64,000 nucleotides of DNA from Macrostomum hystrix (GCA_950097015.1 CATNEN010000001.1:8246001-8310000); one strand, 5' to 3'; counted from the stretch's first letter, positions 14,771 to 45,209 are shown. Program-made: numbers and translations. Notes: generated by a model not told the origin, from the sequence alone.

Positions 14771-14800
14771 ATTATCCATGCTACTCGACTTATTATCCAT
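14540..14800 (-). CDS. putative polyQ micro-protein, copy 1
   Basis: PWxLLPTTV...KVQWWKEKGGAGAATNFTPP is shared with 31124-31390, with in-frame indels and the same stop position. No homology recognised. Confidence 0.35.
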
Positions 14801-22560: not shown

Positions 22561-23952
22561 ATGGAGTCAACCGAAGGAGCCAAGAAAAGCAAAGCGTGTA
22601 TCTCTGCTCTGCTTCCGGGCCTGATGCACGCTGCAATCGTTGGCCTCGTAATGAGGCTGTCCAAAATCAAGGACTTTAAAGGCAAAAGAGGACCAGGCCA
22701 AGTGTTTTCCTTTATCCTCTGTGACGACACCGGCGATATACGTGTAAGCGTGTTCGGAAAGGATCTTAAGCCTTTCCTGGAGGTGTGTCGTGAGGGCGTC
22801 GCCGTCCGCATATCCGGCGGCTGGGTGAAGAAGGCGGATCCCAGGTACAGCACTACAGACAATGAGCATGAGCTAACAGTTTCAATTGACCAAAGTGGAA
22901 CCATTGTGAGGACCCTCGAGACCGTCACTCGACGTGCACCGGGCTATAAGAAGATAAAAGAGATTTCGGACTGTGAAATGAAAATGTAAGTTAACTTGTT
23001 GCAATTGTTAAAAATAAATGGAAAGGATTTGGAATATATATTCGTACTAATTGTTAGGTTAGCCAATTATTTCTAGGAAAACTTATTTAAATCAGTCAGT
23101 GAAGTTGCTTAGTGAATGAGTTAATGCATTCTAGTAAATTCACCATTTGCCTCACATATCTCAGGAATGTTAACGTCTATGGCACGATTTCTGCTGTCCA
23201 GAAACCAACGGAAGTTAAAACCGGTTCCGGAAAACTTGTCAACCTGGCGAAAGTGACGCTTGTTGATCAGTCTGGGTCCTCCGTGTCGTGCACATTTTGG
23301 TCCAGCTCTACTGCCCAAGTGAATGACTGGTCTGTGGGCGACGTTCTAGCGATTCATGGTGCTCAAGTCCAGGAATATTCTCAGACAATCAGTCTCGGAT
23401 GTTCGAAAGCGGAAATTCAGCATTGGCCAGAAGACTCTGCTGATGTCTCCGACATTACCCAGTGGTACAAGGATGCGGTTTCTAGCCAACAGTGCTTCGA
23501 GGAGCTACGCGTGACGCAAAGCTCCCAGCGGGAGAAAAATGCTATCCGTAACGACGAAATGGTATTGCAGTACCCAGAGCGAATGTTCAACCAATTCGAT
23601 GAGGTGCGAAGAATTAGAGTGCGATTTGGGGACAAAGAGGTAAGTTTATTTTATTTCGTGTGGGTTAAAAGTAACATGATGTCAGAGAACCTACTAAAGA
23701 AGCATTAAGTGATTGACTGCTTAGATTCATTATTAACTGGTTCGATGAGGCCTTTTGTCTCTAAAGATTACGTTTATGCATTTAAAAAACAATAATAAAA
23801 AAATTAATTAGGTATATATAAATTTCCTTTCACAGGTGACTTTTTCTCGAGATCAAATCTACAGGAGTCAGCAGATACCGGCTATGTCAACCCCTAAGGC
23901 GCCCAATGTGTCCGAGAAGCCTGGACCATCACATGATTACATGGACGAGTAA
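22561..23952 (+). CDS. RPA70-like tandem OB-fold ssDNA-binding protein, copy 1, 338 aa (exons 22561-22985, 23165-23639, 23836-23952)
   Basis: FSFILCDDTGDIRVSVFG (DBD-A-like) and VTLVDQSGSSVSCTFW (DBD-B-like); three GT-AG exons splice in frame; same structure as the copy at 48517. Confidence 0.88.
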
Positions 23953-24174
23953 GACTTGAAAGACTAATGAAGATGCAATTAACGTGAGTATTGCTTGTGT
24001 ACATGTTTGTCTGCCAGTGTCGCATTGGTATCTGTGTTTAATAGTGATCACAAGCAGTTTCTCCTGATATGTATAAAATGGCCCGATGAGACATATCAGG
24101 CAAATCCTGCTTTATTCACCTAATAAATTCAAATTAGATGAGATCATAATGGAATTGGGATCAGGGATTAGCTG

Positions 24175-24820
24175 AGCAAAATGATTAGCTAAATTGGGTT
24201 CATTGCATAACAGAACTGAGATCATTGCTTAGCTAAATTGTGTTTGTGGCATAACAGAACTGAGAACATTGCTTAGCTAAATTGTGTTTGTGGCATAACA
24301 GAACTGAGAACATTGCTTAGCTAAATTGTGTTTGTGGCATAACAGAAGTGAGATCATTGCTTAGCTAAATTGTGTTTGGGGCATAACAGAAGTGAGATCA
24401 TTGCTTAGCCTAATTGGGTTCATTGCATAACAGAACTGAGATCATTGCTTAGCGTAATTGGGATCATTTGGCATAACTAAGTTGGGATCCTTGCATACTA
24501 AATTAGGATCATAGCAAACCAGAATTGGAATTATCGCATAATGAAATTGGGCTCATGGCATGATACGAATGGGATCATTGAAGAATGGAAAATTGGACTC
24601 ATTGTTCACCAGAATTATGATTAGTAAGAGGGGCGTCCGTAAGGTAATGAAAATTTTCTGCTACGAGTTGGGATCAAGGCAAACCAGAATAGGATCGGAT
24701 TGGGTTCCCAATAGCCAATTGGGTTTCCAACCCAATAGCTAAATTGGGTTCATAGCATAACAGAACTGAGATCATTGCTTAGCTAAATTGGGTTCATTGC
24801 ATAATAGAACTGAGATCATT
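24175..24820 (+). repeat. ~43-bp minisatellite and degenerate derivatives (gcttagctaaattgggttcattgcataacagaactgagatcatt)
   Basis: Also at ~18516-18660, 36380-36490, 45425-45510 and 46750-46945; target site of the nested TIR element. Confidence 0.85.
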
Positions 24821-25049
24821 CCCGGTGGGACATTTACTATACGCCCCTCTGTACGCCCCACTATGCGCCTTCCCACCAGGCACCGGTGGGTGGGCGTATA
24901 GTGGGGCGTACAGCGGGGCGCTGGTGGCCCACCAGTGTGGGGCGCGAGTTGGGGTGGGTGGGGGGTAAATAAAATTCGGGGCACATCCTCAAAATCTACT
25001 GTTAGTAGGCTGTGTTGTATTTTTTGAGCGCAGTAATTAATCGACCATT

Positions 25050-25330
25050 TTCAACTGTGGGATAATTGTCAACTGGGGGATCATTGTCAACTGGGGGATT
25101 ATTGTCAACTGGGGATCATCATCAATGGGTAGTCATCATCAAATGGAGGATCCTGGTCAACTGGGGGATCATGGTCAACTGGGGGATCATGGTCAACTGG
25201 GGGATGATTGTCAACTGGGGGATTATTGTCAACTGGGGGATCATTGTCAACTGAGGGATCATTGTCAACTGGGGGTCATTGTCAACTGGGGGATCATTGT
25301 CAACTTAGAGATCATTGTCAACTGGGGGAT
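25050..25330 (+). repeat. 18-bp minisatellite (gggggatcattgtcaact)
   Basis: Same unit as the array at 61852-64000. Confidence 0.92.
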
Positions 25331-25400
25331 CTTTGTAGCTATAAAAAAGCTGAAAATTATACAGCTGCTATAAAACATTTACTGGACAAGAATTAAAAAT

Positions 25401-25730
25401 AGGGTGAGAGGGAGATCACTAGAGTGAGATGGAGAGCAGTAGGGTGAGAGGGAGAGCAGTAGGGTGAGAGGGAGATCAGTAGGGTGAGAGGGAGAGCAGT
25501 AGGGTGAGAGGGAGATCAGTAGGGTGAGAGGGAGAGCAGTAGGGTGAGAGGGAGAGCAGTAGGGTGAGAGGGAGAGCAGTAGGGTGAGAGGGAGAGCAGT
25601 AGGGTGAGAGGGAGAGCAGTAGGGTGAGAGGGAGAGCAGTAGGGTGAGAGGGAGAGCAGTAGGGTGAGAGGGAGAGCAGTAGGGTGAGAGGGAGATCAGT
25701 AGGGTGAGAGGGAGAGCAGTAGGGTGAGAG
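25401..25730 (+). repeat. 20-bp minisatellite (agggtgagagggagagcagt), ~16 copies
   Basis: Directly visible. Confidence 0.95.
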
Positions 25731-26756
25731 GAAGTGTGGTAGTTAGATGCAGTAGATTTCGCAGGAATCCGAGTTGAGTTGTATTTACGAATGTTCCCAG
25801 GTGTACAGGGAAGTCAGTTATTTAAAGTTTTAATTAATTTTATTAATGCCATTAATGACATGATAAGTCAGAGAGAGATCAAAGAAAAGAAATTAAATTT
25901 TTAGTTTCGCATTAGTAGATTTCTCTCGTAGGCACCAGTTAAGTTTGGGATGCTTAGTCACTCTTTAATTGAGCATATATTTATAGACATATAGTACTGA
26001 CGTAATAGTCAGAGTCAAGATAAAATTTTCTAGTTGACTTTCCAGGTTAATAAGTTCGAGTGGAAATCATTTGAAATCATGAAACCAACTCAGTCGTGTA
26101 GTAAATCATTTCTAGATTGATTTTCAATTGAATCCGACTCGATAAGCTGTGCTCAAATCTATTGGGACACCGACGACAACAATGTACTTTTCATACGTAT
26201 GTTTCATTTTGTTGTATGCACGCCGTATATATAAAGCGGCAATCACTTTAAATAAATATAATTGAACATGCTCATGTAAATTTTCTATTCGTCACCGCTA
26301 TAAATGGTTTACGAATATGTCTCTTCTAGTCTCATTAAATACTTTTGACGCAGCTAAAGGTACAGATTTTTTTTCAATTTCAAAGCGAATATGGATATGA
26401 AACATGTTATAAATTGTAAATTTATAAATTGGAAGAGGGAGGGTGAGTAAAAGGGTTTTGAATATTAGAGGATTTAGAAATGTAAATTGATCTATTTGAG
26501 AAAGGTTCTAACAGGTACGAATAATATGACGATTTAAAGAGACGAAAATTGGATAGGAGCTTGGGATTGAGATTGAGCATTGAGCATTGAGATTGGGTTG
26601 TATCCTGTATTCTGTAAGCTGTATCCATTAGGGGAATATGCGATACGAATTGCATATTTAAATGGGCGGCATAAATCGAGCGGCATAAATCGAGCGGCAA
26701 CCAATGAGAATTCGACTTAAAGTGAGTGCTCTATTGGTCCTCAGTCCTCAGTCCTC

Positions 26757-27246
26757 AGAAGTGGCTCAGTGACGGCTTCAGGTCCAAGAAGTGGCTCGGT
26801 GATGGCTTCAGGTCCAAGAAGTGGCTCGGTGACGGCTTCAGGTCCAAAAAGTGGCTCGGTGACGGCTTCAGGTCCAAGAAGTGGCTCGGTGATGGCTTCA
26901 GGTCCAAGAAGTGGCTCAGTGATGGCTTCAGGTCCAAGAAGTGGCTCGTTGACGGCTTCAGGTCCAAGAAGTGGCTCGGTGACGGCTTCAGGTCCAAGAA
27001 GTGGCTCGGTGACGGCTTCAGGTCCAAGAAGTGGCTCGGTGATGGCTTCAGGTCCAAGAAGTGGCTCGGTGATGGCTTCAGGTCCAAGAAGTGGCTCGGT
27101 GATGGCTTCAGGTCCAAGAAGTGGCTCGGTGATGGCTTCAGGTCCAAGAAGTGGCTCGGTGACGGTTTCAGGTCCAAGAAGTGGCTCGTTGACGGCTTCA
27201 GGTCCAAGAAGTGGCTCGGTGATGGCTTCAGGTCCAAGAAGTGGCT
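26757..27246 (+). repeat. 30-bp minisatellite (gtggctcggtgayggcttcaggtccaagaa), ~16 copies, between ~300-bp direct repeats
   Basis: Directly visible; flanks ~26436-26740 and ~27308-27650 are near-identical. Confidence 0.95.
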
Positions 27247-28114
27247 TGGGAGAGAAGGAAGGAGAGGGGGAAGGACAGGGAAGGAGAGAGGGAAGGAGAG
27301 AGGGTGGAAGAGGGAGGGTGAGTAAAAGGGTTTTAAATATTAGAGGATTTCGAAATGTAAATTGATCTATTTGAGAAAGGTTCTAACAGGTACGAATAAT
27401 ATGACGATTTAAAGAGACGAAAATTAGATAGGAACATAAGTTCGTGTTTAACTTACAATCGGCAGTTGAATGTCGGTCACATCCCAAGCTGTATCCATTG
27501 AGATTGGGTTGTATCCTGTATCCTGTAAGCTGTATCCATTAGGGGAATATGCGATACGAATTGCATATTTAAATGGGCGGCATAAATCGAGCGGCATAAA
27601 TCGAGCGGCAACCAATGAGAATTCGACTTAAAGTGAGTGCTCTATGGTCCTCCTTCTAATTGGTTGCTGGGTTGGACATAGTTTAATTCGATTCATTTTA
27701 TTCTTCGTTTGAATAATTGATTAATTGTTAAGGGGATGAATAGGGAGAATTGGGTGATATTGGGTTAGACTGCATGAGATTTAGTGAGATTGAGGGACAT
27801 TGGATTGTTATGGGAGAGAAAGGGTGAGATTGGGTTAGATTGAGTGAGATTGGGTTAGATTGAGTGAGATTAAGTGAGATTGGGTGAGATAGAGTGAGGT
27901 TGAGTGAGATGGGTGAGGTGGCGTTAGGTGAGGTGGCAAACAAAGCGTTTCTTTAGGGTAGCATATAGATAGCTTACATTGTAACTTGGCTAGCTGTCTA
28001 AAGCGGATACATGCACCCACAATATTTTTTCCAACAACTATAAGCAACAAAGCGGAAGCGGCCAAGAGTAATATTAACTGCTTCCTCTTAGAGGCTGTGC
28101 CAGACACTGGGACC

Positions 28115-29089
28115 ATGAATTTTGATAGCCGAAATACAACTGAATCCCTAAAGGTAAATCTATGATTCAAGACAGTGACTGGTAGTTCTATGGGAGACTG
28201 GGTATCTCGTAGATTTTCTAGGTAGCTAGCTCATAGCTAGAAAGACAGTTACTATAGCAACACTTTATTGCGGAGACTGGCTAGATTGTCTAGCTATGGG
28301 ACACGCTGTCTAGATTGATTGTTCACGGGAGACAAGCTAATCGCAAACTCATTTAATTCTTACCAGCCCGTCGATGACCTGAGCGGTCTAGACGCCTTGG
28401 ACTTCACCGTGATGCGCCGTGAATTCGGTGACCTCCAATCTTACGACAGCGCTGCCCTCTTCGATCTCTATAAGCCGGTTGCCGACGAAGATGCCACGGG
28501 GGCCATGAGCGCATCAGAGTGCTTCGCAGGCAAAAATGAGCAGCATACCATCAGGTCCATCGGACAGCAACAGCATCAGCAGCAGCTGCCTCCGATTGAT
28601 AGCTTCCTTTGGTTGGTTCCTTCGCATCTCCCAACGCATGTGCAGCCACCAGGCGTCATAAAAAGAACAAGGAAGAAGCGTGCTGGCATCGGTGAGTTTT
28701 TTTGAGCTGCGAAAATTTGGGATTTGGGAATCTTTAGTATTTACCAAAAATTAGCTATTAAAACTTAACATTGCCCAATCTCAGACAGGAATTTTTGGCT
28801 GTGGGAGTTTCTGTACCACTTACTCGAAACTCCGTCTGTCGCTGACCTGTCGCCACCATGCTTGCGCTGGGAGAACAAGCTGGAGGGCATTTTCCAAATT
28901 GTAAACCCAACCGGCCTAGCAGAGGCCTGGAGCAGTCACAAGCGGCGGGACATGAGCTTTGAAACGATGAAGCGAGCGCTGAGGCATTACTACGAGGACA
29001 AGCTTATCACCAAGACCCACCCAAGAGACAAGCACTTTTACAAATTTCACTTCGACCACGAGAAAGTAAAACTTTTTTTAGAAAAATGA
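28115..29089 (+). CDS. ETS-domain transcription factor (ELF/E74-like), ~222 aa (exons 28115-28153, 28367-28691, 28785-29089)
   Basis: Spliced in frame to WLWEFLYHLL...LRWENKLEGIFQIVNPTGLAEAW...MSFETMKRALRHYY...FYKF, the ETS signature. Exon 1 is less certain than exons 2-3. Confidence 0.85.
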
Positions 29090-31123
29090 GTTAGACAAAA
29101 TGACACCCAAATCAGAAATCCCATAATTTAATTACCTCAGAAATCCCTACGTTGCCCTAGAAATCACATGATCCAGACAAATAGACGATGACTCAATTAC
29201 ATCACGGATTGTCTGATTGTCAGTTGCGCTACTTCACTCATGTAAACAAGTATGAGATCTGAAATGTCCAGCTAGCGGTGTACTGCAGTATTAAATATGA
29301 ATTGGGTTTTGTTTTTCTTGCTTTTTTATTTTAAGTGTAACACTACCTGTGCTAGCTTGTTTGCTTATGGGGTTTGTTTTTAGATAAGGCACATTTGGGG
29401 GAATCTAGGCTGAACATGACATCTAAAACCACAGATAGGAATTCTAGAACAGAATTCATTTCACGAGTGAAGCGGGGATGCACATTACCCAACAATACCT
29501 TAGAAATCACATGATCCAGACAATGACTCAGAATTAAAGTACGGATTGTCCGATTCTCAGTTGCGTTACTTCACTCATGAAAACTATTTTTTCTTACGGA
29601 TATGTTTTGTTCTGTTTTCTCGTGTTTTCTCATATTCCCCATGCATGACTTATCATCTGTAATTAAACCTTGATTTTGAAGACATGTAATTAAGACAGAC
29701 TGTTTCCTATAAAAGTATGAGATAACTACAAGTACTTATAAATGCTATATAAATGCTACTTATAAATACTATTATTAAACCAATTGTTGCTGCACATTAT
29801 TTCATAAACTACAACAAACAAAACAAAAAGATTATTCAACCTTGTTGCGAGCGCAGCCGTTGAACTCCATTGACATGAAATGAGTCCGTGAAGGTCGCTG
29901 ATCGTTATCTAACCTGCTAAACTCGGCCAGATACAGCTCGCCGGGATGCTGGGCCAACTGCTACTCGACGCTGAGTAGCTGATTGAATTAGAATAGACAC
30001 TAATATCAATGTCATCCGCAGCTTCCGTTTCTTGACACGCCTGACCGTGTACCAGGCGTCAGGTGTTCATGGAGAACGTCTGGAAAAAATATGGAATGTT
30101 TCAAAACCAATTTACATATTTATCTTTGTCTATAACGATTGCCTGTAATCAGATGGGAAGCATGCTAATCTTTTAAGTGAGCTAGCTTAAGGGTCGGAGA
30201 GTAAATGTTAGTAGCAGCTTAGTATAAATGTTAGTTGAAATGAAAAAATGAACTTTTGCTACGAATTGTAGCAAACTCTTAGCTACAGGGACACAGAGGT
30301 CAGATGGTAAGCATGCGAATCTTTTAAGTGTTAGCCGGCTTAAGGGTCGGAGGGTAAATGTTAGTAGCAGCTTAGTATAAATGTTAGTAGAAATGAAAAA
30401 ATGTACTTTTGCTACGAATTGTAGCAAAGCAGGCAAGCAAAGCAAGTGAGCAAGTGCAGGAACACGAAGCAAGGAGTGCTCGATAAATATGTTGGTTATC
30501 ATGCTAAGCTAATGCTATAAGAAGCTAAACATTTAGGCTGTGCATCAAGCTAATAAATAAATATGAGTGAAATAAAGGAAGACAACAAGCAAAGATGTAT
30601 TCCAAAATATTCAAATTCAAATTCAGATTTAGCCATTTTAGCCATTTAGCCAATTCAAATTTCAGAAATGCGCGATCTGAAATGACGAAGTGGGAGGTTT
30701 CGAGGTGTGTTAGCAGCTTGTTATTGGACAGCATGAAGGTGGAGTGAGGGGTTATCTTCGTACGCAGTTGCTATCTGCTTCATAAAATTTGCAGATAAAC
30801 TTGCTATAAAGCTCATGCAACTTTCTGGTTAAACACGAACACGACAAGACACGACACATGACATTATGGCTACAATCATAATGAATGTGAGTACATTTTG
30901 CTACGTTGTAATATTGCATTAGCATTGTAGTGTGACAATCGCATTTTGATAAATTGTGCTATAATGGCTAAAAGTAAATATTGTTTTACCAGAGTCAATG
31001 AAAACTTACACCTGCAAACGGGTATAATTTTACTACTATAGCGCTTATTTAAAGAATTAACGATTAAGGATTAAGAATTAAGGAATAAAGGTATCACATA
31101 TAGGTAGCTTAGACAAACCTCAT

Positions 31124-31287
31124 TTATTTCTTTGCCGGTTGGGGAGGGCACCGGGGCCTGGGCCTCGGCGGTGTAAAATTGGTAGCCGCCCCGGCCCCTC
31201 CCTTTTCCTTCCACCACTGGACCTTCGACTGATCTGATCCCACCGTGGTGGGCAGCAGCTGCCACGGGCTGCTCGGAGTCTGAGTCG

Positions 31288-31339
<52 letters not shown>

Positions 31340-31390
31340 AATATCTATATTCGTTCTTTCCAATTCTTTATATTCTTTCCAATAGTCCAA
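31124..31390 (-). CDS. putative polyQ micro-protein, copy 2
   Basis: Paralog of 14540-14800 with a different N-terminus. Confidence 0.35.
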
Positions 31391-34360
31391 TATTCCAATA
31401 TTCTTTCCAATAATAGTCCAATAGTCTGAAAATTGAATTGGTATTGGTAACTATAATTGGTAATTGGTAATTGGTAACTTGGTAATTGGTAATTGGTAAC
31501 TGGCATTGAGAACTGGTAAGGCTTGGCTAATCATTTGTTGTAAAGTGTTTGCTAGGTACCCAACCCAAAATTGTTGGTTAGCTCCTGCAAAGCAATAACA
31601 ATTGATCCCAATGTACACTAGAGTTATATAACTTTGCTCTGAAATTTCCTTATAATGACTATTTATTTATCAACTTTATTTTACCAGGTCTTTATCACAC
31701 TGGCTCACTAGCTGGAATTGTGGCATCTGGTTGTCTTCACTCTCATGGTATAGCTAAGGGCATATGAGAACTAATCACATATGATTAAAGGCTATGGTAA
31801 GTGCTTGAGTACATAATCATTTCTCAGTGTTAGCCCAACCCAGCCCAAGATACCAACACACAATTGCTGGTTGCTTGAGCTCTTAGTTTTGATAATGCAT
31901 GCACAGTAGTTTGCCTTGAGCTATTGGTTTTGAGACTGCATGAGCAGTAGTTTGCCTTAAAACTGCTGTTTATCAAATCCTCTCCTCTTCTCCTCTCCCC
32001 CCTCCTCTTCTCCTCGAGCTCCTCTCCCCCCTCCTCTCCCCCTCTCCCCTCCTTTCCTCTGCTCTTCTTTCCTCTCTTCTTTCCTCTCCTCTTCTCCTCT
32101 CCCCCCTCCTCTTCTCCTCGAGCTCCTCTCCCCCCTCCTCTCCCCCTCTCCCCTCCTTTCCTCTGCTCTTCTTTCCTCTCTTCTTTCCTCTCCTCTTCTC
32201 TTCTGCCTTTATTCTCCTCTTCTTTTCTTGTTTCTATAAGCAATATAAGTGATCCTAGTGTACACTAGAGTTATTTGGTCTAGTACAGTTATATAACTTT
32301 GCTCTGAAATTTCCTTATAATGACTATTTATTTATCAACTTTATTTTACCAGGTCTTTATCACACTGGCTCACTAGCTGGAATTGTGGCTTCTGGTTGTC
32401 TTCACTCTCATGGTATAGCTAAGGGCATATGAGAACTAATCACATATGATTAAAGGCTATGGTAAGTGCTTGAGTACATAATCATTTCTCAGTGTTAGCC
32501 CAACCCAGCCCAAGATACCCAACACACCAATTTTTTGCTGGTTGCTTGAGCTCTCAGTTTTGATAATGCACGCACAGCAGATTGCCTTGAGCTATTGGTT
32601 TTGATACTGCATGAGCAGTTGTTTGCCTTGAAACTGCTGTTTATGAAATTCCTCTAGCTAGTGACTATTTATTTATGAACACTATTTTCCCCAGGTCTTT
32701 ATAACACTAGCTAGAATTGTGGCATTGCTAGCTATCTTTACTGAGTTATCTGATGTACTAGAGTGTACACTTGAGCTATCAGATCTTGTACATTTATGCT
32801 CAAGCCCCATACACAGTTCATACCAGCCCTGTATAATTACCTCAATTGTGGTCCTATTTAACCTAATATAGCTAACAATCCTTTATAAGCTCTTATCAGC
32901 CTTCTGCCCCTTCTTGCCTAGCTATAGATCTAAATACAAACAGCAAACCAACTGTCTCACCTCTCACACCTAACAGGACAAGGAGAGCCTATCTAACAGG
33001 ACAAGGAGTCCCAAGAATCCTAGTCTGGTGTTGAAGCTGAATGGCCAACAATCAACAACAGCCTGTTGAGTGCCAACCAAAAAGACATGATTGACTAACT
33101 GTGAATAAACTAATCTTGTTCTGAATGCCTTTATGAATATTGATTAAACTGAGGCCCTCTTTTTATCCCTAGTTGACATTTCAAAATTTGCTAATATAGA
33201 TAAACACAGAACTTGAGCTGCTATAAGAGACTTAAAGGTAAAAAGGTAAAAATGTGCCTTCTGTAAAAACTGTAGCTACAGTGCATAAATATTTCAGAAC
33301 CTATACACAAACTTCATAAGAACACACTTTGCTGCTGTATTCATATAACATACTCTAAATACAAATGCCAACTCAAATAATTATGACATGGCTGAAATTC
33401 CTAGCAATTAAATGCTTGAAATAATAATTAGCTTTGCAAAATAAACTTTCCCTATGTTTCGTGAAGAAATGGCAGGAAAAAATCTCATGAGTCTTTGTAT
33501 TTATTTCGTCTTGTCTAATTAATTTCAGTGTCAACTTATGTTTATCGGTTTGAAATTTCACACGTGCATTAGATTAACGGAGAGAAAGTGAAAGTGAAAA
33601 CAAAGGTTTTCAGTGCATTGCAGCTTAAAAAGTGATTTGCTCAAGCCAAAATAAATGTGAATTCTCAAATTCTACGTTTGAGAAATATGTGATATATGAA
33701 ATATGTTTCTGATTTTCTAACTATTGCTGTGTGACTGGCTTTTTGAAGGACAAAAACACTTTTTCACTGGCTGTTGTTAAGCCAAAGTGGCGTCAAGACT
33801 GACAATGCCGTAGGAAATTAGCGCTGTACATTATGAAAATTCTAACTACAACTGTGTAATGCTGCTGCAGTTCTAAATATCAATTCGGTTTTGGTTTTCT
33901 CGCTTTTTAATTTTATAAAACAAAATATTTTTACGAAGATCAAGCTGCTGGCTGCAGAAGTGTTCAGTCCATGGACTGGGGTTACGCCATGCTGACCCTT
34001 ATCTAAAAATTCTGAAGTTTGTTTTCTCAAAGGGAACAACGACTCAGAGAACTTAAAGCCCGTCAGAACTTCAGAATAAGCCGCCTGTCCACCTGTGTTG
34101 ACAGTCATTTTTTTATTCACACGCTCGTTGCAACGAAGATGATCTATCTAATTGTTTGCTTATGAAGTTTGTTTTTAGATAAGGCACATTTGGGAGAATC
34201 TAGGCTGAACATGACAGCTAAAACTGCAGAACATTCTAGAACATTCTGGAACAGAATTCATTTCACGAGTGAAGCGGGGATAGAGGAAAGGAAAGGGGGG
34301 TTGGCGGTGCCGGGGGTACTTATAAAATTATAAACTCGGCCGGTCGATTTCGAAATTTCG

Positions 34361-34726
34361 ATGGAGCTCCGAAATAAAACACGAACCACGCGCCCAGTAG
34401 AGTTGATGGAGCATAGGAGAATCAGCAAGCAGGTGATGGAGCAGCAGCGCAGAGCCAGAATTAATGCCAGCTTGGACAGACTCAAAGAGCTGCTGCAGGC
34501 CAACAAGGTGATAAAACCGTACCGGATTAAGCGCCTAGAGAAGGCCGACATCCTGGAGCTGACTGTGGAGCTGCTGCTGAATGGCTCAGCCAAGACTCAA
34601 TCTACGGCCATGAGCTTCTGCTGCAAGTCTTCGGCCTCATCAACGGTGTCGGCTTTGTCTACTGACGAAGAATCTAGCCAGTCGATGGACCAGGAGGGAG
34701 CCCAGCCTGTGTGGCGTCCTTGGTAA
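34361..34726 (+). CDS. Hairy/E(spl)-like bHLH-WRPW protein, copy 2 (121 aa, intronless, no Orange domain evident)
   Basis: RRISKQVMEQQRRARINASLDRLKELL...RLEKADILELTVE; C-terminal WRPW; TATAAA at 34321; CACGAG (N-box) at 34264. Confidence 0.9.
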   Translation: MELRNKTRTTRPVELMEHRRISKQVMEQQRRARINASLDRLKELLQANKVIKPYRIKRLEKADILELTVELLLNGSAKTQSTAMSFCCKSSASSTVSALSTDEESSQSMDQEGAQPVWRPW

Positions 34727-34824
34727 CCGGCCCCTGGCAACAGCATCCGGCATTCCAGCATAAGTCAACTTAGTTAATTAGTTTCGTCGTTTTTTTATTT
34801 AGTTGTCATGGACTGATTGTCCCC

Positions 34825-35550
34825 CAAACTGAGGATCTGGGATTGTCACGAAACTGAGGATCTGGGATTGTCACGAAACTGAGGATCTGGGATTGTCACC
34901 AAACTGAGGATCTGGGATTGTCACCAAACTGAGGATCTGGGATAATTGTCATTAAACTGAGCTTTAAATTTTTATATATTTTTGTATCATTGTATCGTTG
35001 TATCGTATCAATGTTGTATCATTGTTGTTGTGTTGTATCAGTGTTGTATCAAGGCTTAGTTCATTTCATTGTTTAAAACTTTTTATCTGGGGGATTATCA
35101 CCAATCTGGGATTGTCCCAAACTGAGGATCTGGGATTGTCACCAAACTGAGGATCTGGGATTGTCCCAAACAGAGGATCTGGGATTGTCACCAAACAGAG
35201 GATCTGGGATTGTCACCAAACTGAGGATCTGGGATAATTGTCATTAAACTGAGCTTTAAATTTTTATATATTGTTGTATCATTGTATCGTTGTATCGTAT
35301 CAATGTTGTATCATTGTTGTTGTGTTGTATCAGTGTTGTATCAAGGCTTAGTTCATTTCATTGTTTAAAACTTTTTATCTGGGGGATTATCATCAATCTG
35401 GGATTGTCACCAAACAGAGGATCTGGGATTGTCACCAAACTGAGGATCTGGTATAATTGTCATTAAACTGAGCTTTAAATTTTTATATATTGTTGTATCA
35501 TTGAATCGTTGTATCGTATAAATATTGTATCATTGTTGTTGTGTTGTATA
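34825..35550 (+). repeat. 25-bp repeats (aaactgaggatctgggattgtcacc) within a triplicated block
   Basis: Directly visible downstream of Hes copy 2. Confidence 0.85.
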
Positions 35551-38500
35551 CAAATCATTAAATAAATAAATCAATAAATGCTCAGTTAAAGAGTGACTAT
35601 AAGCATGCCACACTTAACTGGTGCCTACGAGAGTCAGTTCCGATGTCGCCGCATTAGAAATCAACAAATGCGAAACAAAAAATTTAATTGCTTTCACTGT
35701 CGATCAATTCTTTTCTTTGATCTCTTTCTGACTTGCTCATGCCATTTTAAAGAACTGACTTACCTGTATTACGTATTACGTATTATGACTTACGTATTAA
35801 CCTGGAAAGTCACCTAGAAAATTTTATCTTTACTCTGACTATGTCAGTACTATATGGCTGTCGTCGGTGTCCCAATAGATTTGAGCACAGTTTATCGAGT
35901 CGGATTCAATTGAAAATCAATCTAGAAATGATTTCCTGCACGACTGAGTTGGTTTCATGATTCAAATGATTTCCACTCGAACTTATTAACCTGGAAAGTC
36001 ACCTAGAAAATTTTATTTTTACTCTGACTATGTCAGTACTATATGGCTGTCGTCGGTGTCGCAATAGATTTGAGCACAGTTTATCGAGTGGGATTCAATT
36101 GAAAATCTATCTAGAAATGATTTCCTACACGACTGAGTTGGTTTCATGATTTCAAACTAACATTTCTACTAACAGTAGACTTTGAGGATATACCCCGAAT
36201 TTTATTTACCTCCCGTCGACCCCCCACCCCAACCCGCGCCCCACACTGGTGGGCCACCAGTGCGCCGCCTGGCCACACTATGCGCCCTCCCACCAGTTAT
36301 CGGTGGGTGGGCGTATAGTGGGGCGTACAGCGGGGCGCTGGTGGGAGGGCGCGGGTTGAGCGCGGGTTGTCCCACCGGGTTGCTTAGCTAAATTGGGATC
36401 TTTTGGCATAACTAAAATGGGATTATTACATAACTAAATTGAGATCCTCGCATAACTAGATTGAGATCATTGCATAACTAGATTGGGATCAAGGCAAACC
36501 AGAATAGGATCGGATACAATCGGATCCCAATTTAGTTGTGCCATGAAAGTTAATAAGTAATAGTGAAATTTATGTAGTTAAATATTAGGTGAATATATAG
36601 CAGGTTGGCTGCATATCATTGGGCCTTGAGATTGTGGTTGAAATAACGTGTTCGCTGCTTTTTCACGATTCAGAGGTTCTTCCACTCTAAAACTGAGGGT
36701 ATGCAGCCATGAGAGGTTTGAAGCAGCTTCAGCAAACCTAGAGACTCTTGTGATAGCTAAGCTTTTTGTGTGACGTTGAGTGCGTGAACTTAACTTGCCC
36801 CAGTGAATGCCTCTGACCAGCAGTGCAGAGTAAAGCAAGCCAACAAGCAGTAGGATTGACACCATTATTCTTGCAGTCAAATGCAATGAACTGTGCAATG
36901 ATACTGTCTTGTTGGCGGAGCCTTCTGCAAGTTCATCATGTTTACTGCTTGTGGGTAATATTTTTAGGTGCAATGCAATTTTTTCTTTTTTCATTGAATT
37001 GAATTCTCTACATTTGGAGTTTGTTTTCTTATAACGTCATAATGATATGTATTTGTATAATAATTATTTTGCCAGATGCTCACTCAATTGTTGTTGTTTT
37101 GTTTTCAATGTGTTTTGCAATTGAAGAAATACAAAAAACGTTTCAGTGGACAAAGACCAGTCCCATGATTCATGAATTTGCACACCTGGTTACCTGCCTT
37201 ATTCTATTTTAAAAGATAAATTGTCAGGCATGCATTTATAATGAAGAATGATACATAATGGATTACTAAGAAAAGAGGTCAGATGAGAAATAGGATCTGA
37301 TCAGAACTGGAATCATTAAGAAAAAGAAAGGAGATTAGAAATTGATCCATTGATATTTAATTAGCCATTGATATTAGCTAACCATCAATGCAAATCTTGC
37401 TAGTCCACTATACTAAAAATGAAATGGTTGCTTGGTTGCTTGCTAGGTTGCTTGTAATTGATTTTCTCCCGAACGGCTCAACCGATTTTCACCATTTCTT
37501 CACTAAAATATGCCAAATATGGGCAGAATTTTACACGTATTTTTATTAAGCTGAACTTTATTGCTAAGGGGATTAAATATTCGAAAAACATTATTTTGTC
37601 AAAGGTCAAACCATCTTGGCCTATTGAGAATTTTACTCACTGCCACTGAATTAGAATTGCATCGTCAAATTGCGCAACAACCCCTAGCTGATTGAATTTG
37701 AAGCCTGCACTCTGGAGACAAATTGGAAATAAATGTACACAACCAACCGCGAGACTGAGTGTACTCTATTTTCTTACTTCATTGTACAAAGCCAGAACTT
37801 TGAGAATTCATTTTATAAGGCTGATTTTTGCGACCACTAACCAACAGTCGGAATAGCCGATGTGTGAGCACTAGGAATAGGTTAGGCTAGGCTAGGGTTC
37901 GATTCTGCACTGCGTCAAATCATTTAGACTATTTTTTCAGCCAGTAGTGAATCTTTGAAGAATATTTGAATTTATTTTTTTCATTTCGTAAATAAAATAT
38001 CATAAATCATAGCAAATCTGAGTTTGAATCATTGCGAAAATAGAGTCTGAATCGTGGCAAAACCAGAGTCTGAATTACTGCTAAACCAGAGTTCGAATCA
38101 TTGCTAAACCAGAGTTCGAATCATTGCTAAACCAGCGATTGAATAATAGCTAAAATTGAGTTTCAATCATGGCTAAACCAGAGTCTGAATCATTGCTAAA
38201 CCAGATTTTGAATCATGGCAAACCAGAGTTTGAATCAGGTCTAAACCATCGTTTGAATCATGGCTAAAGCATCGTTTGAATCATAGCGAACCAGAGTTTG
38301 AATAATGGCAAATCCAGTTTTGCAAAGCCAGTTTTGGTAAAAGTGATACTGATCTGATCACTGATCACTGATATCAGTGATACTGGTTATAACACTGATA
38401 AGAATTTCAGTGTGTCAAATGTACATAACTGTGCCAACCCCACAGCTTTTCTCACTGTCCAGTGTACATTGTGAGCCCACTGCCCCGGAATGTGGACGCA

Positions 38501-38723
38501 CGGGCCTGGGGAGCCCGCACTCCAAATTATCGGTTTTTTAGATTTAGACCCCTGTTTTCTTTATCGATTTTTCAGTTTTTACCCTGGATAATAAAAAGCC
38601 TGCAAATTAGATTGGCTAAAGGGCGCCTTATCTGATTATTCAGACATCCGAATTCACAAACTTTCATCTTTCAAACCATATCATTATTTCTCAATTATTT
38701 ATTTTTGCTCTCATTTCTCAATC

Positions 38724-41700
38724 ATGGTTCGACGAGGCGCCAGCAGTTTAAAGAAGAGCCGCGATGCCAAGCGACGGCGACAGGCAGAATCCGAGGCAGA
38801 GCGGGCTGCCCGACTGGAAGAACAGCGGCAGCGGGATGCTCAGCGCAGACATGCTGAGACTGAGGCAGAGCGGGCTGCCCGACTGGAAGAACAGCGGCAG
38901 CGGGATGCTCAGTGCAGACATGCTGAGACTGAGGCAGAGCGGGCTGCCCGACTGGAAGAACAGCGGCAGCGGGATGCTCAGCGCAGACATGCTGAGACTG
39001 AGGCAGAGCGGGCTGCCCGACTGGAAGAACAGCGGCAGCGGGATGCTCAGTGCAGACATGCTGAGACTGAGGCAGAGCGGGCTGCCCGACTGGAAGAACA
39101 GCGGCAGCGGAATGCTCAGCGCAGAGATGCTGAGACTGAGGCAGAGTGGGCTGCCCGACTGGAGGAACAGCGGCAGCGGAATGCTCAGCGCAGAGATGCT
39201 GAGACTGAGGCAGAGTGGGCTGCCCGACTGGAGGAACAGCGGCTGCGGAATGCTCAGCGCAGACATGCTGAGACTGAGGCAGAGCGGGCTGCCCGACTGG
39301 AAGCCGATCGCATTCGTCGCCGTGGAGCTGTGGTTTCTAGGTGAGTTTTTAGCAAAGTTTTATAACAAGTCTTTATTTTGTTTTTTTCTTAATTGCCTTG
39401 AAGGGGATAATTTTTTGTATCCGTTTGTTTTAAAAAGCCAATTAAGGGAGCTGTGCTTACGTTCACTCATTGCCCGTTAGGTCGGACACGCAGCAGCAAG
39501 GTACGGAAGCTATTGTACCCTTTGAGCAGTTGCAGGTAATCCCCATTGTTGGTGATGGCAATTGCTTCTTTTATGCCGTGTGTGATCAGCTGCGTGGAAC
39601 CCCGCTGGAAACTGACGCAGCCTCCTTGCGGCAGGATTTGTCTTGCCGTGTTGCAGAACTCATGCCACAGTTGGTTGCAGATGGCCTTATTGCACCTGAG
39701 AGTGCTGATGACATTGTGAATTGCTCTTTTCAAACAGGAACTTATGTTTCAGATGAAGTTGCCTCTTTGTTTAGCCGCTGCTTTAATGTGGACCTGGTCA
39801 TTTACCAGGCCAATGGTAGTGTGATGCAGTATTTCAGGGCTAATCTGCATCCTCCTAATGCCATTGTGCGTGTGCTTTTGCGCCATGAACATTACGAGTC
39901 ACTGAGACTTCGAGAGCCTTTGCAAGCCTTTACAGATGCTGAGTTCCCGTGCCTGGCAGCTAGCAGAACTCCTGCCAAGAGGGCCAAGAAAGCCAAGGGC
40001 CCGAGAGCGATGCCGGCAGAACATGAGACTGCGGGCCGCGCTGAAGACGGACCCGCTACTGCAAGGTAAACTGACACACAATTAACAGTTACATTTACAT
40101 TTAACAGTTACTAAGAGATACATTCCATTTTTATTATCAGGCCTGAGACGATGGCGAGGCCAGAAGCTCCAGCCCATGACTGCGGGCCAATGGACTGGGC
40201 ATGCAACCATTGCGGTGCCAAGCTGTTCCGCATGGAGACAGGCAATTTCTGCTGTGCTGGCGGCAAGGTGAAGCTGCCCACCCGGACTGTGCCACAGCTG
40301 CTGGCTGACCTGTACATGGGCCGGCATGGCATGAGCTCAGAGTTCCTGACCAACATCCGGAGCTACAACTCTGTGCTGCACCTGACCTCGCTGAGTGCCA
40401 AGCCGCGGTTGGTGCCAGGCTGGAATCCCAGCTACATCATCAGCGGTCAGCTGCACCACACTGCTATGCCGCTGTTTGCTGAAGCGTCTGCTGTTCCTCG
40501 CGGCTGGCAGGTGTACTTCACTGACCGCGAACTCGAAAGCCAGCAGAGTCTGAGCGATAGGGTGAAGCCAGAGCTACATGAGCTGCTACAGACGTTGCTT
40601 CACGAGTGCAACCTTTACGTTCGGAGCCTGAAGGCTGCAGCACAGCGGATCATGGAGGATCCGGAGCTTGTGGATGCGCGAATCGTGATTCACCCGGACC
40701 GAAGACCTTCTGGGGAACACATTCGGTGAGCTAACAATAACTGAAAAGGGATTCGAACACATTTTAAAACCTGTCTTTTAAAGCTTTGTGCCTGTGTACA
40801 CAGGAATGTTTACCGTTGTAAAGAGTTTTGTTAAAAGCATTTGTTACTACCGTTCAAAATCAGGCGCTACAATTTGCCCACGGCAAACGAGGTCGGCATC
40901 CTCATTGTTAAGGACACTGAGGACACTGAGGCCCCTGAAGACGGTGATGAGCCAGCAACTAGCCGAGATGTTGTCATTCAACTGCGGGGTGGCGGCTACA
41001 AGAGGATTAGCAAAACGCACCGATCGTATGATGCACTGGAGTACGTGTTGCTGTTCCCCCATGGCGAGGACGGCTGGCACCCGGAGCTGCGCATGAGCAA
41101 TGGCCGCAAGCTGACGCCGATGAAGTACTATGCCAGCGAAATCATGGTGCGACGGGCCAGAGCAGCCTGCTGCACCACGGACGGAGGCTGTTCCAGCAGT
41201 ACCTGGTGGACATGTGCGCCAAGATTGAGTCAGAGAGGCTGCTCTATCTGCGGACCCATCAGAGCGATCTGCGCAGTGAGACGTACAGCGGTCTGCGAGA
41301 CGCTCTATTCGCTGCTGATGGCAGGTCGACCGACACAAATCCGACTGATATTGGCAAGCCTGCGCACGTGTTCCTGTCCTCCAGCTTCGTTGGCGGGCCA
41401 AGGTACCTGATGGAGAGGCTGCAAGACGCCATGACCTATGTACAAAAGTTTGGCAAGCCGGACCTGTTTGTCACGGCGACGTGCAACCCTAAGTGGCCGG
41501 AAATCAGTGCACAGCTGCTGCCTGGACAGCGACCTGAGGACCGGCCGGATATTGTCACGCGTGTTTTCGAGCTGAAGAAGAAGGCTCTGCTTGCCGAGCT
41601 GAGGAAGCGCTTTGGAAAGGAGGCCGCGCATGTTTGCTCTCTGGAATATCAGAAGCGCGGTAAGTTAGCAAATTGCGCTTTCAATTTTCATTCTGTAATT

Positions 41701-44700: not shown

Positions 44701-45209
44701 TGGCTGATGAGGAGGCCGCTACGCATTTCCCGACGGAGTTGCTAAACCAGCTGGATGCCCCGAATTTTCCAACTTATCTGCTCAGGATCAAGGTGGGCAT
44801 GCCGCTGGTGCTTCTTCGGAATATCAACCCGCCGCGGCTGTGCAACGGTACACGGCTCATCGTTCTCACGATGGGCGATAATGTGCTGCGCTGCAAGATT
44901 GCCGCCGGTCAGTTCACTGGAGACGAGATCCTGCTGCCGCGAATTCCGCTGATTCCAAACAATGCGGATCTACCAGTGAGTTTCAAGCGGCTGCAGTTTC
45001 CTGTGAAGTCGAGCTTCTGCCTTACAATACACAAAGCACAAGGACAATCCCTGGAGACCGTTGGAGTTGACCTGGCTGTCGGTTGCTTCACTCATGGTCA
45101 GCTGTACACGGCGCTGTCACGGGCGAAGAACGCCGCGAATGTTCGCGTCCGGGTTTCCGGAACCAAGACCAGGAACGTGGTGTATCCAGAAGTGCTCACT
45201 GGAGATTAA
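38724..45209 (+). CDS. RepHel: Helitron RepHel (helical repeats-OTU-Zn finger-HUH Rep-Pif1 helicase), 9 exons, two frameshifts (~41150, ~43640)
   Basis: Exons 38724-39340, 39481-40065, 40141-40725, 40864-41659, 41917-42259, 42455-42773, 42857-43877, 43963-44359, 44445-45209. Motifs GDGNCFF..HYESL, CNHC..CC, FVTATCNPKWPEI, EYQKRGLPHVH, KYVIKY, PAGTGKT, WDEISM, GDFRQLLPV, CNGTRL, TIHKAQGQSL, HGQLYTALSR. Confidence 0.95.

What the first reader, a model, noticed from the sequence alone, without database searches (positions are those of the whole stretch)
24821..36379. Gene-capturing TIR transposon carrying intact ETS and Hairy/E(spl) transcription-factor genes, nested in a Helitron
Seen: perfect 12-bp TIRs (CCCGGTGGGACA...TGTCCCACCGGG), a TT duplication, an exactly reconstructable empty site, subterminal repeats (actatacgcccc / ggggcgtatagt type) and longer inverted arms (24915-25008 vs 36165-36268; 25990-26180 vs 35860-36045). 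They enclose a spliced ETS gene, a polyQ micro-ORF and a bHLH-WRPW gene, but no transposase. Known: CCC-starting TIRs with 2-bp TSDs typify animal EnSpm/CMC elements, and Pack-type elements usually carry gene fragments rather than whole genes. Inference: a mobile activator-plus-repressor cassette that can move by cut-and-paste and be amplified by the host Helitron.
Basis: partly seen in the sequence, partly recalled or inferred. Interest (0 to 1): 0.9.

Follow-up and report, generated by a model that had tools for sequence, protein, structure and literature searches.

The report
Flatworm transposon carrying two regulator genes
An 11.6-kb cut-and-paste DNA transposon in a Macrostomum-like flatworm has lost its transposase but carries complete ETS-type and Hes-type transcription-factor genes, and its relatives have spread these genes to dozens of sites on one 27.6-Mb contig.

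Summary
Window 24821-36379 is bounded by perfect 12-bp inverted ends and a TT duplication. Three paralogous uninterrupted sites show a precise 2-bp insertion.

- **Mobility:** the same ends recur at 40 or more places. Six complete elements each have a different 2-bp duplication.
- **Partner:** the family is CMC (EnSpm/Mirage-like). Its transposase (intact 646- and 661-aa ORFs elsewhere) has the D-D-E triad with the C(2)C and H(3)H motifs. It is 73% identical to a Macrostomum lignano protein.
- **Origin:** the element is a transposase-deleted derivative of this family.
- **Cargo:** a two-exon ETS gene and a minimal Hes gene (bHLH + WRPW, no Orange domain). ETS and Hes ORFs also lie downstream of transposase copies, so they are a lineage-wide module, not a one-off Pack-type capture.
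- **Host repeat:** Helitron-like by gene content. Its other copies are empty at this site, so "amplified by the Helitron" is not supported.
- **Selection:** mixed. ETS dN/dS is 0.47 between subfamilies and about 1 among recent copies. Hes is 1.1-2.0. Several copies are broken.
- **Transcription:** assembled contigs with GT-AG junctions indicate sense-strand transcription. The predicted ETS splice was not seen.

First readers noted similar Hes/ETS cassettes elsewhere in this genome. Follow-ups found CMC elements with BEN or CtIP partner genes.

The parts
24819..24820 (.). left copy of the 2-bp target-site duplication (TT)
   Evidence: paralogous empty sites with a single TT
24821..24832 (+). 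5' terminal inverted repeat, CCCGGTGGGACA
   Evidence: the same end sits next to unrelated flanks at 25 or more loci
24833..25030 (+). 5' subterminal region: repeats of the terminal motif (CCCACC[A/G]G) and GGGGCGTA[T/C]AG units, with a local hairpin 24842-24877 / 24885-24920
   Evidence: 99-100% identical over the first 200 bp (24821-25020) in three other elements
25046..25336 (+). 18-bp tandem array, 16 copies
   Evidence: related to a satellite at window 61.8-64 kb
25400..25731 (+). 20-bp tandem array, 16.6 copies, shared with the transposase-bearing element T
   Evidence: 96-97% to T 552-1054
25985..26188 (+). roughly 190-bp unit, inverted relative to 35795-36156
26757..27246 (+). 30-bp tandem array, 16 copies; the ORFs listed here are repeat artefacts
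27577..28388 (+). backbone segment 98.6% identical to T 13107-13919; it overlaps the first 70 bp of the ETS exon-1 open frame
28319..28691 (+). ETS gene exon 1 (open frame from 28319, first in-frame ATG at 28411), with a GTGAGT donor after 28691
   Evidence: 100% identical protein in copy C
28692..28784 (+). predicted 93-bp intron of the ETS gene
   Evidence: intron position conserved in 14 or more copies and in a host-like gene on C39; diverges about 5 times faster than the exons; not seen spliced in contigs
28785..29089 (+). ETS gene exon 2: whole Ets DNA-binding domain plus stop codon
   Evidence: Pfam PF00178, 58.3 bits, cut-off 26.9
31500..33235 (+). region giving a spliced, apparently non-coding sense transcript; exons and introns were mapped on copy C and transferred approximately
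34318..34331 (+). TATA-like box about 35 bp upstream of the Hes start codon
   Evidence: sequence reading only
34361..34726 (+). minimal Hes gene: 121 aa, single exon, bHLH plus C-terminal WRPW, no Orange domain
   Evidence: Pfam PF00010, 40.9 bits; E(spl)/HES are the best named relatives and M. lignano Mlig018776 is 78% identical in the bHLH
34815..35451 (+). 25-bp arrays within a 292-bp duplication
35795..36156 (+). 189-bp repeat, 1.9 copies, inverted partner of 25985-26188; T carries a longer array of it
36166..36367 (-). 3' subterminal region, inverted homologue of 24842-25008
36368..36379 (-). 3' terminal inverted repeat
36380..36381 (.). right copy of the 2-bp target-site duplication (TT)
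23112..24820 (+). host repeat, left side: RPA-like OB-fold ORF (23112-23708) and a 44-bp satellite
36380..45209 (+). host repeat, right side: satellite, then fragmented Helitron Rep/helicase ORFs (Helitron_like_N 41206-41715; PIF1 44039-44476; Pif1 2B and UvrD_C 44400-45209)

Best explanation
Window 24821-36379 is a non-autonomous, transposase-deleted member of a CMC-superfamily (EnSpm/Mirage-like) cut-and-paste transposon family of a Macrostomum-like flatworm.

**Shown**
- Identical 12-bp ends, and 2-bp target-site duplications at six independent elements.
- Paralogous empty sites that are uninterrupted at exactly this point.
- A family transposase with the CMC catalytic signature, present as intact ORFs elsewhere in the genome.
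- Sequence continuity between this element and a transposase-bearing element T: the termini, the subterminal arrays, and an 812-bp segment at 98.6% identity.
- Two complete transcription-factor genes: a two-exon ETS gene and a minimal Hes gene (bHLH + WRPW).
- ETS and Hes relatives lying downstream of transposase copies on the same strand.

**Inferred**
- The ancestral element was TIR - transposase - ETS - spacer - Hes - TIR.
- This copy lost the transposase region and is moved in trans by the 646-aa transposase, which binds the shared ends.
- The element inserted into one copy of a Helitron-like repeat and has not been copied by it.
- The ETS gene came from a host gene by DNA-level capture, because the intron is kept and a host-like gene on C39 has an intron at the same place.

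What the two factors do is not shown. My split is about 55% passengers that hitch-hike and decay copy by copy, about 30% element-serving regulators, and about 15% a host-used expanding gene family.
For: - **Ends and insertion:** TIRs and TT duplication. The 200-bp 5' end has 74 matches from 40 scored candidates, next to unrelated flanks.
- **Duplications:** TT, CA, GG and AC at the four near-identical elements, AG at a roughly 530-bp miniature, and AA at T. The chance of six out of six is about 6e-8.
- **Empty sites:** flank matches overlap by 2 bp at three loci.
- **Transposase:** intact 646- and 661-aa ORFs. D186, D263 and E509, with C282/C285 and H485/H489, are invariant or nearly so across 14 homologues. 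This is the signature given for EnSpm/Mirage/Chapaev/Transib in PMC12730594. Nine of the 14 aligned proteins match PF13960. The nearest Atlas clusters carry Transposase_21, DUF1258 and Plavaka, at score 0.98. The best hit is M. lignano at 73% identity.
- **Derivation from T:**
- **Shared backbone:** locus H has an intact transposase followed by the non-coding backbone that lies between ETS and Hes in this element.
- **Linkage to the transposase:** in L051 the transposase is followed 90 bp later by an intronless 208-aa ETS ORF. Same-strand transposase / ETS / Hes neighbourhoods occur at C1:17.82, 19.07, 19.40, 21.28, 22.62 and 9.02 Mb.
- **Domains:**
- **Constraint on ETS:** dN/dS is 0.47 between subfamilies (p = 0.019), and the intron diverges about 5 times faster than the exons (p = 0.001).
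- **Transcription:** contigs with three GT-AG introns and an exon/intron depth contrast on the sense strand.
Against: - The ancestral architecture rests on one 4-kb locus plus coordinates.
- T, the only transposase-bearing element with both ends read, lacks both genes. It keeps only the first 70 bp of the ETS frame, and its transposase is frameshifted.
- The transposase itself has no Pfam hit at E <= 1.
- The termini are CCC..GGG, not the CA..TG that is usual for CMC.
- Hes dN/dS is 1.1-2.0 between subtypes, and recent ETS copies are about 1.
- Copies are decaying. C ends WRP-stop and H ends WRPR. F has two stops in ETS. B, D, E and F lack ETS exon 1.
- The predicted ETS splice was not seen, and the runs' type is not on record.
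Confidence: 0.85

Rival explanations
1. The ETS and Hes proteins are element-serving accessory factors, comparable to TnpA of En/Spm or to the BEN partner genes noted in other CMC families of this genome. They would bind the element's own arrays or tune its transcription, or that of host genes, and would be kept by selection among transposon lineages.
For: - The module travels with the transposase lineage in several subfamilies.
- ETS dN/dS is 0.47 across the older divergence, and the exons are conserved relative to the intron.
- In 16 Hes copies of 93% identity or more, the matched stretch has no internal stop (two of them match only residues 1-120 and have lost the last W).
- The changes between the Hes subtypes keep the key bHLH residues.
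- The element ends are packed with arrays.
- Earlier scan notes report partner genes in other CMC families here.
Against: - T transposed with neither gene present in cis.
- Hes dN/dS is 1 or higher.
- Many copies are broken.
- No ETS core (GGAA or GGAT) or Hes class-C site is enriched in the ends. The CACCAG motif is enriched only as a variant of the terminal motif, and it is absent from T's ends.
- No binding data exist.
Confidence: 0.3
2. The genes are pure passengers. A host ETS gene and a host Hes gene were captured once at the DNA level, have since hitch-hiked, and decay neutrally after each insertion. Open frames persist only because the copies are young.
For: - dN/dS is about 1 among recent copies, and 1 or higher for Hes.
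- There are truncations, stops and lost WRPW motifs.
- T moves without the genes.
- M. lignano has just two annotated copies of the Hes relative.
- A host-like ETS gene on C39 has the same intron position.
Against: - ETS dN/dS of 0.47 over dS of 0.38 is not neutral.
- Coding divergence is lower than non-coding divergence between A and C (p = 1e-5).
- Linkage to the transposase has persisted across subfamilies that differ by 30-40% in ETS protein sequence.
Confidence: 0.55
3. The repeated units are segmental or tandem duplications of a gene cluster on contig C1, and the inverted ends are incidental.
For: Almost all copies lie on one contig (28 of 30 Hes copies on C1). Copies differ by large indels.
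Against: - Homology stops exactly at the 12-bp ends, next to unrelated flanks.
- Each element has its own 2-bp duplication.
- Three empty paralogous sites exist, and copies also occur on C38, C34, C3 and C12.
Confidence: 0.02

Closest known systems
En/Spm (CACTA) / Mirage / Chapaev transposons (CMC superfamily)
   Same: [quoted passage not shown]
- Short target-site duplication of 2 bp. By my own recollection this is the Mirage and animal EnSpm length; PMC12730594 gives 2-5 bp for the wider clade.
- Short TIRs followed by dense subterminal repeats.
- Non-autonomous deletion derivatives that are moved in trans.
- More than one gene per element.
   Different: - The termini are CCC..GGG rather than CA..TG.
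- The transposase scores below every Pfam model, and only its homologues reach PF13960 or Transposase_21.
- The extra genes are ordinary animal transcription factors (ETS, Hes), not a TnpA-type protein.
Pack-MULE / Pack-CACTA type gene-carrying non-autonomous elements of plants
   Same: Family TIRs and target-site duplication, no transposase, and host-derived coding sequence between the ends.
   Different: - Those elements carry gene fragments, and full-length genes are exceptionally rare (PMC6431247). Here two complete genes are present, one with its intron.
- The genes are shared with transposase-linked copies rather than acquired by this copy alone.
Enlarged multi-ORF En/Spm families (red alga Chondrus, cited in PMC6431247) and TET/JBP-carrying EnSpm, Plavaka and KDZ transposons of fungi (PMC12730594)
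   Same: CMC-type or related DNA transposons that carry extra complete genes alongside the transposase, spread within the lineage.
   Different: The host is an animal. The cargo is a pair of sequence-specific transcription factors, not a DNA-modifying enzyme. The benefit to the element is untested.
Hairy/E(spl) (HES) repressors
   Same: The bHLH is most similar to E(spl)/HES proteins (about 45-50% identity), with a C-terminal WRPW, the motif that recruits Groucho/TLE.
   Different: - No Orange domain.
- The basic-region proline is replaced (SKQVME instead of SKPIME).
- Only 121 aa and intronless.
- The nearest relatives are two short M. lignano proteins of the same build.
ETS transcription factors
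   Same: A complete Ets winged-helix domain (Pfam, 58 bits).
   Different: The protein is short, about 195 aa if translation starts at 28411. It is only 41-45% identical to the best database ETS domains found.

Membership tests
CMC (EnSpm/Mirage/Chapaev) DNA transposons | [quoted passage not shown] | tested here: met
   D186, D263 and E509 are invariant; C282 and C285 (CSYC), and H485 and H489 (HALLH), are invariant or nearly so in 14 homologues. The criterion is taken from PMC12730594.
CMC (EnSpm/Mirage/Chapaev) DNA transposons | short target-site duplication (2-5 bp in the clade) | tested here: met
   2 bp at six of six complete elements, plus a 2-bp overlap at three empty sites.
CMC (EnSpm/Mirage/Chapaev) DNA transposons | termini 5'-CA..TG-3' (in most cases) | tested here: not met
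   The termini are CCCGG..CCGGG. The source says 'most cases', so this does not exclude membership.
CMC (EnSpm/Mirage/Chapaev) DNA transposons | match to curated transposase models (Transposase_21, DUF4218) | tested here: inconclusive
   The family transposase has no Pfam hit at E <= 1. Nine of the 14 aligned proteins match PF13960. The nearest Atlas clusters carry PF02992 at score 0.98.
Pack-type gene-capturing non-autonomous elements | family ends and target-site duplication, no transposase | tested here: met
Pack-type gene-capturing non-autonomous elements | cargo acquired by the non-autonomous element itself, typically as gene fragments | tested here: not met
   The genes are complete, and the same genes and backbone are linked to transposase copies.
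Hairy/E(spl) (HES) family | bHLH of the E(spl) type | tested here: met
   PF00010 at 40.9 bits. The best named hits are E(spl)/HES.
Hairy/E(spl) (HES) family | Orange domain (PF07527) | tested here: not met
   No hit. Nearly all E(spl) hits carry PF07527, but this protein and its M. lignano relatives do not.
Hairy/E(spl) (HES) family | C-terminal WRPW | tested here: met
   The last four residues of the ORF are WRPW. The motif is lost in copies C, H and E.
Hairy/E(spl) (HES) family | proline in the basic region | tested here: not met
   Q stands at that position (SKQVME), read. That this position is normally a proline is my own knowledge.
ETS family | Ets DNA-binding domain | tested here: met
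   PF00178 at 58.3 bits against a cut-off of 26.9, covering profile positions 20-80. The preceding LWEFL helix is in the same exon.
Helitron (host repeat) | Rep (HUH) plus Pif1-like helicase gene | tested here: met
   PF14214 at 135 bits and PF05970 at 113 bits, on fragmented ORFs at 41.2-45.2 kb, with an RPA-like OB fold at 23.1 kb.
Helitron (host repeat) | 5'-TC..CTRR-3' ends with a 3' hairpin, insertion between A and T | not tested
   The boundaries of the host repeat were not determined, and other copies could not be fetched.

The most novel reading that the evidence does not exclude
A lineage of animal CMC transposons has made an ETS factor and a minimal Groucho-recruiting Hes repressor part of its own gene set. 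The pair would act for the element. They might time or place its expression (for example in germline or stem cells), or bind its subterminal arrays as TnpA does. As a by-product, the element seeds one chromosome with dozens of fast-evolving transcription-factor genes.
Probability: 0.25. Interest if true: 0.85.

Novelty: new variant of a known kind. Interest (0 to 1): 0.62.

Why it matters
Cut-and-paste transposons of animals are usually thought to carry a transposase and little else. Whole host genes inside TIR elements are reported as very rare (PMC6431247).

Here a young, demonstrably mobile CMC family carries two complete sequence-specific transcription-factor genes. It has raised them to roughly 20-30 copies each, nearly all on one 27.6-Mb contig.

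If the factors serve the element, this would be an animal counterpart of the two-protein En/Spm system, built from borrowed developmental regulators. If they are passengers, it is still a clear natural case of transposon-driven duplication and fast divergence of transcription factors. Either way it offers a ready test bed, with known ends and a known transposase, for a new 2-bp-duplication transposon tool in flatworms.

Tried and rejected
1. **Upstream CCC..GGG element as the partner.** Rejected: different ends, an 8-bp duplication and a hAT-like protein.
2. **Pfam on the transposase pieces and on the intact ORF.** No hit.
3. **Binding-site enrichment in the ends.** GGAA, GGAT, CACGTG and CACGCG are not enriched. 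CACCAG is enriched 20-fold in A-D, but it is only a variant of the terminal motif and does not occur in T's 5' end. I found no link between Hes subtype and end motif.
4. **PolyQ ORF.** No domain, wrong strand relative to the transcripts, and it lies in a variable CAG tract.
5. **Exons of the spliced transcript between ETS and Hes.** No open frame.
6. **ETS protein search.** Only 8 weak hits at 41-45% identity, none named, so the ELF assignment is untested.
7. **A 190-kb fetch of further elements.** As a result, dN/dS used only 8 Hes and 6 ETS copies, and no complete transposase + ETS + Hes element was read.
8. **The look-up of encoding contigs.** Closed, so synteny in M. lignano could not be checked.
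9. **Literature searches.** Searches for Macrostomum CMC elements or for transposon-borne ETS/Hes genes found nothing relevant.
10. **The joined two-exon ETS coding sequence.** It was never built or searched.

Full report
**Observation**

The ends are as described. CCCGGTGGGACA lies at 24821-24832, and its exact reverse complement at 36368-36379. With up to one mismatch, the window has 3 matches against 0.15 expected. TT flanks both ends.

The inverted-repeat scan confirms two sets of arms. The subterminal arms pair 24842-25008 with 36166-36337 at 82-92% complementarity. A second pair joins 26005-26186 with 35851-36156 at 93-96%. There is also a local hairpin, 24842-24877 against 24885-24920. 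The interior is rich in tandem arrays of 18, 20, 25, 30 and 189 bp.

**Is it mobile?**

The first 200 bp were searched against the window's own genome (220 Mb, 42 contigs; the window is C1:8246001-8310000). This gave 74 matches from 40 scored candidates. In the fetched loci the homology begins exactly at CCCGGTGGGACA and sits next to unrelated flanks.

Three further elements share 99-100% identical ends and could be paired end to end:

| Element | Orientation | Length | Duplication |
|---|---|---|---|
| This element (A) | + | 11.6 kb | TT |
| C1:17794322-17803647 (C) | - | 9.3 kb | CA |
| C1:19957940-19982181 (B) | + | 24.2 kb | GG |
| C1:27086569-27103949 (D) | - | 17.4 kb | AC |
| Miniature at C1:8066.4-8066.9 kb | | about 530 bp | AG |
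| T on C38 | | 15.75 kb | AA |

Six out of six has a chance probability of about 6e-8.

The flanks of the window copy are themselves a repeat, with 15 or more copies at 95-98% identity. At C7:6753945/6, C5:5174285/6 and C1:12993309/10, the matches to the left flank (ending at 24820) and to the right flank (starting at 36380) overlap by exactly two bases. These are uninterrupted paralogous sites with a single TT. Transposition with a 2-bp duplication is therefore shown, and segmental duplication is excluded.

**The autonomous partner**

It is a different thing. Its ends read CCCTATTGGAAT..., it makes an 8-bp duplication (AGCCAGGG), and it has a hAT-like protein. It is inserted in a non-LTR retrotransposon.

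The true partner was found by pairing ends on C38. Element T (C38:21951122-21966876) has the same 12-bp ends, and 48 of its first 50 bases are identical to this element's. It encodes a transposase that is frameshifted in this copy. Intact ORFs of 646 and 661 aa, 98-99% identical to T's, lie at C1:14.185 Mb and C1:17.826 Mb.

Evidence that the protein is a CMC transposase:
- Aligned with 13 homologues, D186, D263 and E509 are invariant. So are C282 and H485/H489, and C285 is nearly so (CSYC and HALLH).
- This is the D-D-E triad with C(2)C and H(3-4)H motifs that PMC12730594 gives for EnSpm, Mirage, Chapaev and Transib. The same paper gives 2-5 bp duplications for the clade.
- Nine of the 14 aligned proteins match PF13960.
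- The nearest Atlas clusters carry Transposase_21, DUF1258 and Plavaka, at score 0.98.

The protein itself has no Pfam hit, and the termini are not CA..TG. Its best database hit is a Macrostomum lignano protein at 73% identity. This, with the Hes result below, places the genome in or near Macrostomum.

**Relation of this element to T**

This element shares four things with T: the termini, the 20-bp array and neighbouring segments (96-98%), the 189-bp inverted units, and an 812-bp segment (27577-28388) that is 98.6% identical to T 13107-13919. That segment runs 70 bp into the ETS exon-1 open frame. T therefore keeps a stump of the ETS gene, and this element keeps none of the transposase (tblastn gives no hit in the whole window).

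Locus H (C1:14173001-14203000) has an intact transposase followed by the same non-coding backbone that lies between ETS and Hes in this element.

In L051 a decayed transposase is followed 90 bp later, on the same strand, by an intronless 208-aa ETS ORF.

By coordinates, transposase, ETS and Hes hits lie on the same strand within 0.5-12 kb at C1:17.82, 19.07, 19.40, 21.28, 22.62 and 9.02 Mb.

The simplest reading is an ancestral multigene element, TIR - transposase - ETS - spacer - Hes - TIR, from which different copies lost different parts.

**The ETS gene**

- Exon 1 is open from 28319, with the first in-frame ATG at 28411, and ends at 28691 before GTGAGT.
- An AG at 28783-28784 restores the frame, so exon 2 (28785-29089) encodes the whole Ets domain. 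Pfam scores it at 58.3 bits against a cut-off of 26.9.
- I did not build or search the joined coding sequence. The exons were treated apart.
- The intron position recurs in 14 or more copies, with the same 115-bp gap between protein matches. Another subfamily has a 224-bp gap at that place. A host-like gene at C39:4927400-4928741 has a gap of about 830 bp there.
- The intron diverges about 5 times faster than the exons (p = 0.001).
- Only A and C of the six sequenced cargo copies keep exon 1. B, D, E and F are 5'-truncated, and F has two stops.

**The Hes gene**

- The ORF at 34361-34726 encodes 121 aa with a bHLH (40.9 bits) and a terminal WRPW. It has no Orange domain, and a Q stands where Hes proteins normally have the basic-region proline.
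- The nearest relatives are two short M. lignano proteins of the same build, 78% identical in the bHLH. After those come E(spl)/HES proteins at about 45-50%.
- A TATA-like box lies about 35 bp upstream of the start codon.
- There are two subtypes. Type 2 lacks the first ATG and would start at the Met that M. lignano uses.
- Copy C ends WRP-stop, H ends WRPR, and E is frameshifted.

**Copy number and location**

There are about 30 Hes matches at 74% identity or more, 16 of them at 93% or more with no stop inside the matched stretch. There are about 30 ETS-domain matches at 60% or more. Of the 30 Hes matches, 28 lie on C1, which holds 12.5% of the genome (p about 1e-23).

**Selection**

- ETS between the cargo type and the L051 type: dN/dS is 0.47 at dS 0.38 (excess of synonymous changes, p = 0.019).
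- ETS among recent copies: about 1, on very few changes.
- Hes type 1 against type 2: 1.1-2.0. This is not different from neutral, but it is incompatible with an omega of 0.2 (p = 5e-6).
- Coding sequence is less diverged than non-coding sequence between A and C (0.67% against 2.79%, p = 1e-5). However, the few coding changes are non-synonymous.

The picture is weak long-term constraint on ETS, fast or relaxed evolution of Hes, and copy-by-copy decay.

**Transcription**

No run on record as RNA holds the stretch. Two runs of unrecorded type (about 48-50 Mb of contigs each, from one study) hold a quarter of its words.

Laid on copy C, their contigs show three GT-AG introns with GTAAG donors on the sense strand between ETS and Hes. 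They also show an exon/intron depth contrast, for example 76-149 against 2-5. Depth over ETS exon 2 is 74-120, from a contig about 96% identical, so from another copy. One 165-nt contig identical to the Hes ORF has depth 7.

This behaves like RNA, but that is my inference. The predicted ETS intron was not seen removed. The spliced exons have no open frame.

**The host repeat**

An RPA-like OB-fold ORF lies at 23112-23708. Helitron_like_N (41206-41715) and PIF1 / Pif1-2B / UvrD_C (44039-45209) lie downstream on the same strand, broken into several frames. The flanks are multi-copy. So "nested in a Helitron-like repeat" is reasonable, although its boundaries were not determined.

The other copies of that repeat are empty at this site, and the three other near-identical copies of the TIR element lie in unrelated flanks. 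There is therefore no sign that the Helitron has copied it.

**Comparison with what is known**

By transposase motifs and duplication length the element belongs with CMC. It departs in its terminal bases and in its cargo.

It resembles Pack-type elements in having no transposase. It fails their defining point, because the cargo is complete and is shared with transposase-linked copies. Complete host genes in TIR elements are called exceptionally rare, and enlarged multi-ORF En/Spm families are known from a red alga (PMC6431247). Fungal EnSpm, Plavaka and KDZ elements carry TET/JBP genes (PMC12730594).

I found no paper on Macrostomum CMC elements or on transposon-borne ETS or Hes genes.

Within this scan, first readers noted Hes/ETS cassettes in giant transposons at C1:19.39-19.41 Mb and at about C1:15.19 Mb. 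Follow-ups described BEN and CtIP partner genes in other CMC families of this genome. I used these as leads only.

**Verdict**

This is a new variant of a known kind: an animal CMC transposon lineage with a two-transcription-factor module, seen here in a transposase-deleted, recently mobile copy. The function of the module is open.

Noticed in passing
L031:4989 to L032:4106 (C1:8234989-8244106): A separate hAT-type transposon. Its ends read CCCTATTGGAAT..ATTCCAATAGGG, it makes an 8-bp duplication (AGCCAGGG), and it has a 688-aa ORF with a DPAH motif. It is inserted inside a non-LTR retrotransposon whose two halves lie at L032:3944-5827 and L031:3013-5037.
   Followed up: partly
window 11038-17659: A second, older partial copy of the same transposon lineage, without TIRs. 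One piece is T-like (11038-11864), and a cargo backbone (13816-17419) is 88-97% identical to 30412-34693. It carries a type-2 Hes ORF (17108-17659) whose C-terminal half is internally duplicated.
   Followed up: partly
contig C1 as a whole: Nearly all Hes, ETS and transposase copies of this family lie on the 27.6-Mb contig C1, spread from 0.9 to 27.1 Mb. So do many copies of the host Helitron-like repeat. Of the 30 Hes copies, 28 lie on 12.5% of the genome. What makes this contig special is unexplained.
   Followed up: no
copy C, L033:2791-4849 minus strand (about window 31500-33235): A spliced sense-strand transcript with three GT-AG introns, including alternative acceptors, and no open frame lies between the ETS and Hes genes. 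It has higher contig depth than the Hes ORF.
   Followed up: partly
G000:C39:4927400-4928741: A host-like ETS gene is 52-59% identical to the transposon-borne one and has an intron at the same position. It is a candidate source of the capture. It could not be fetched.
   Followed up: no
L044:4270-4635 minus strand and L047:41-349 minus strand: A conserved small ORF (about 100-120 aa, starting MKFL.VFEADRQVIE) lies upstream of the transposase and antisense to it in two copies. It has no Pfam hit.
   Followed up: no
window 3401-8734: An intact-looking 1777-aa BEL/Pao LTR-retrotransposon polyprotein, with DUF1759, Peptidase_A17, RT, integrase zinc-binding domain and DUF5641.
   Followed up: no
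window 61800-64000: A satellite of 2.2 kb or more, made of the same 18-bp unit as the element's 5' subterminal array (25046-25336), at 86-89% identity.
   Followed up: no
G000:C1:8066403-8066929: A miniature derivative of the family, about 530 bp, with both ends and an AG duplication.
   Followed up: partly
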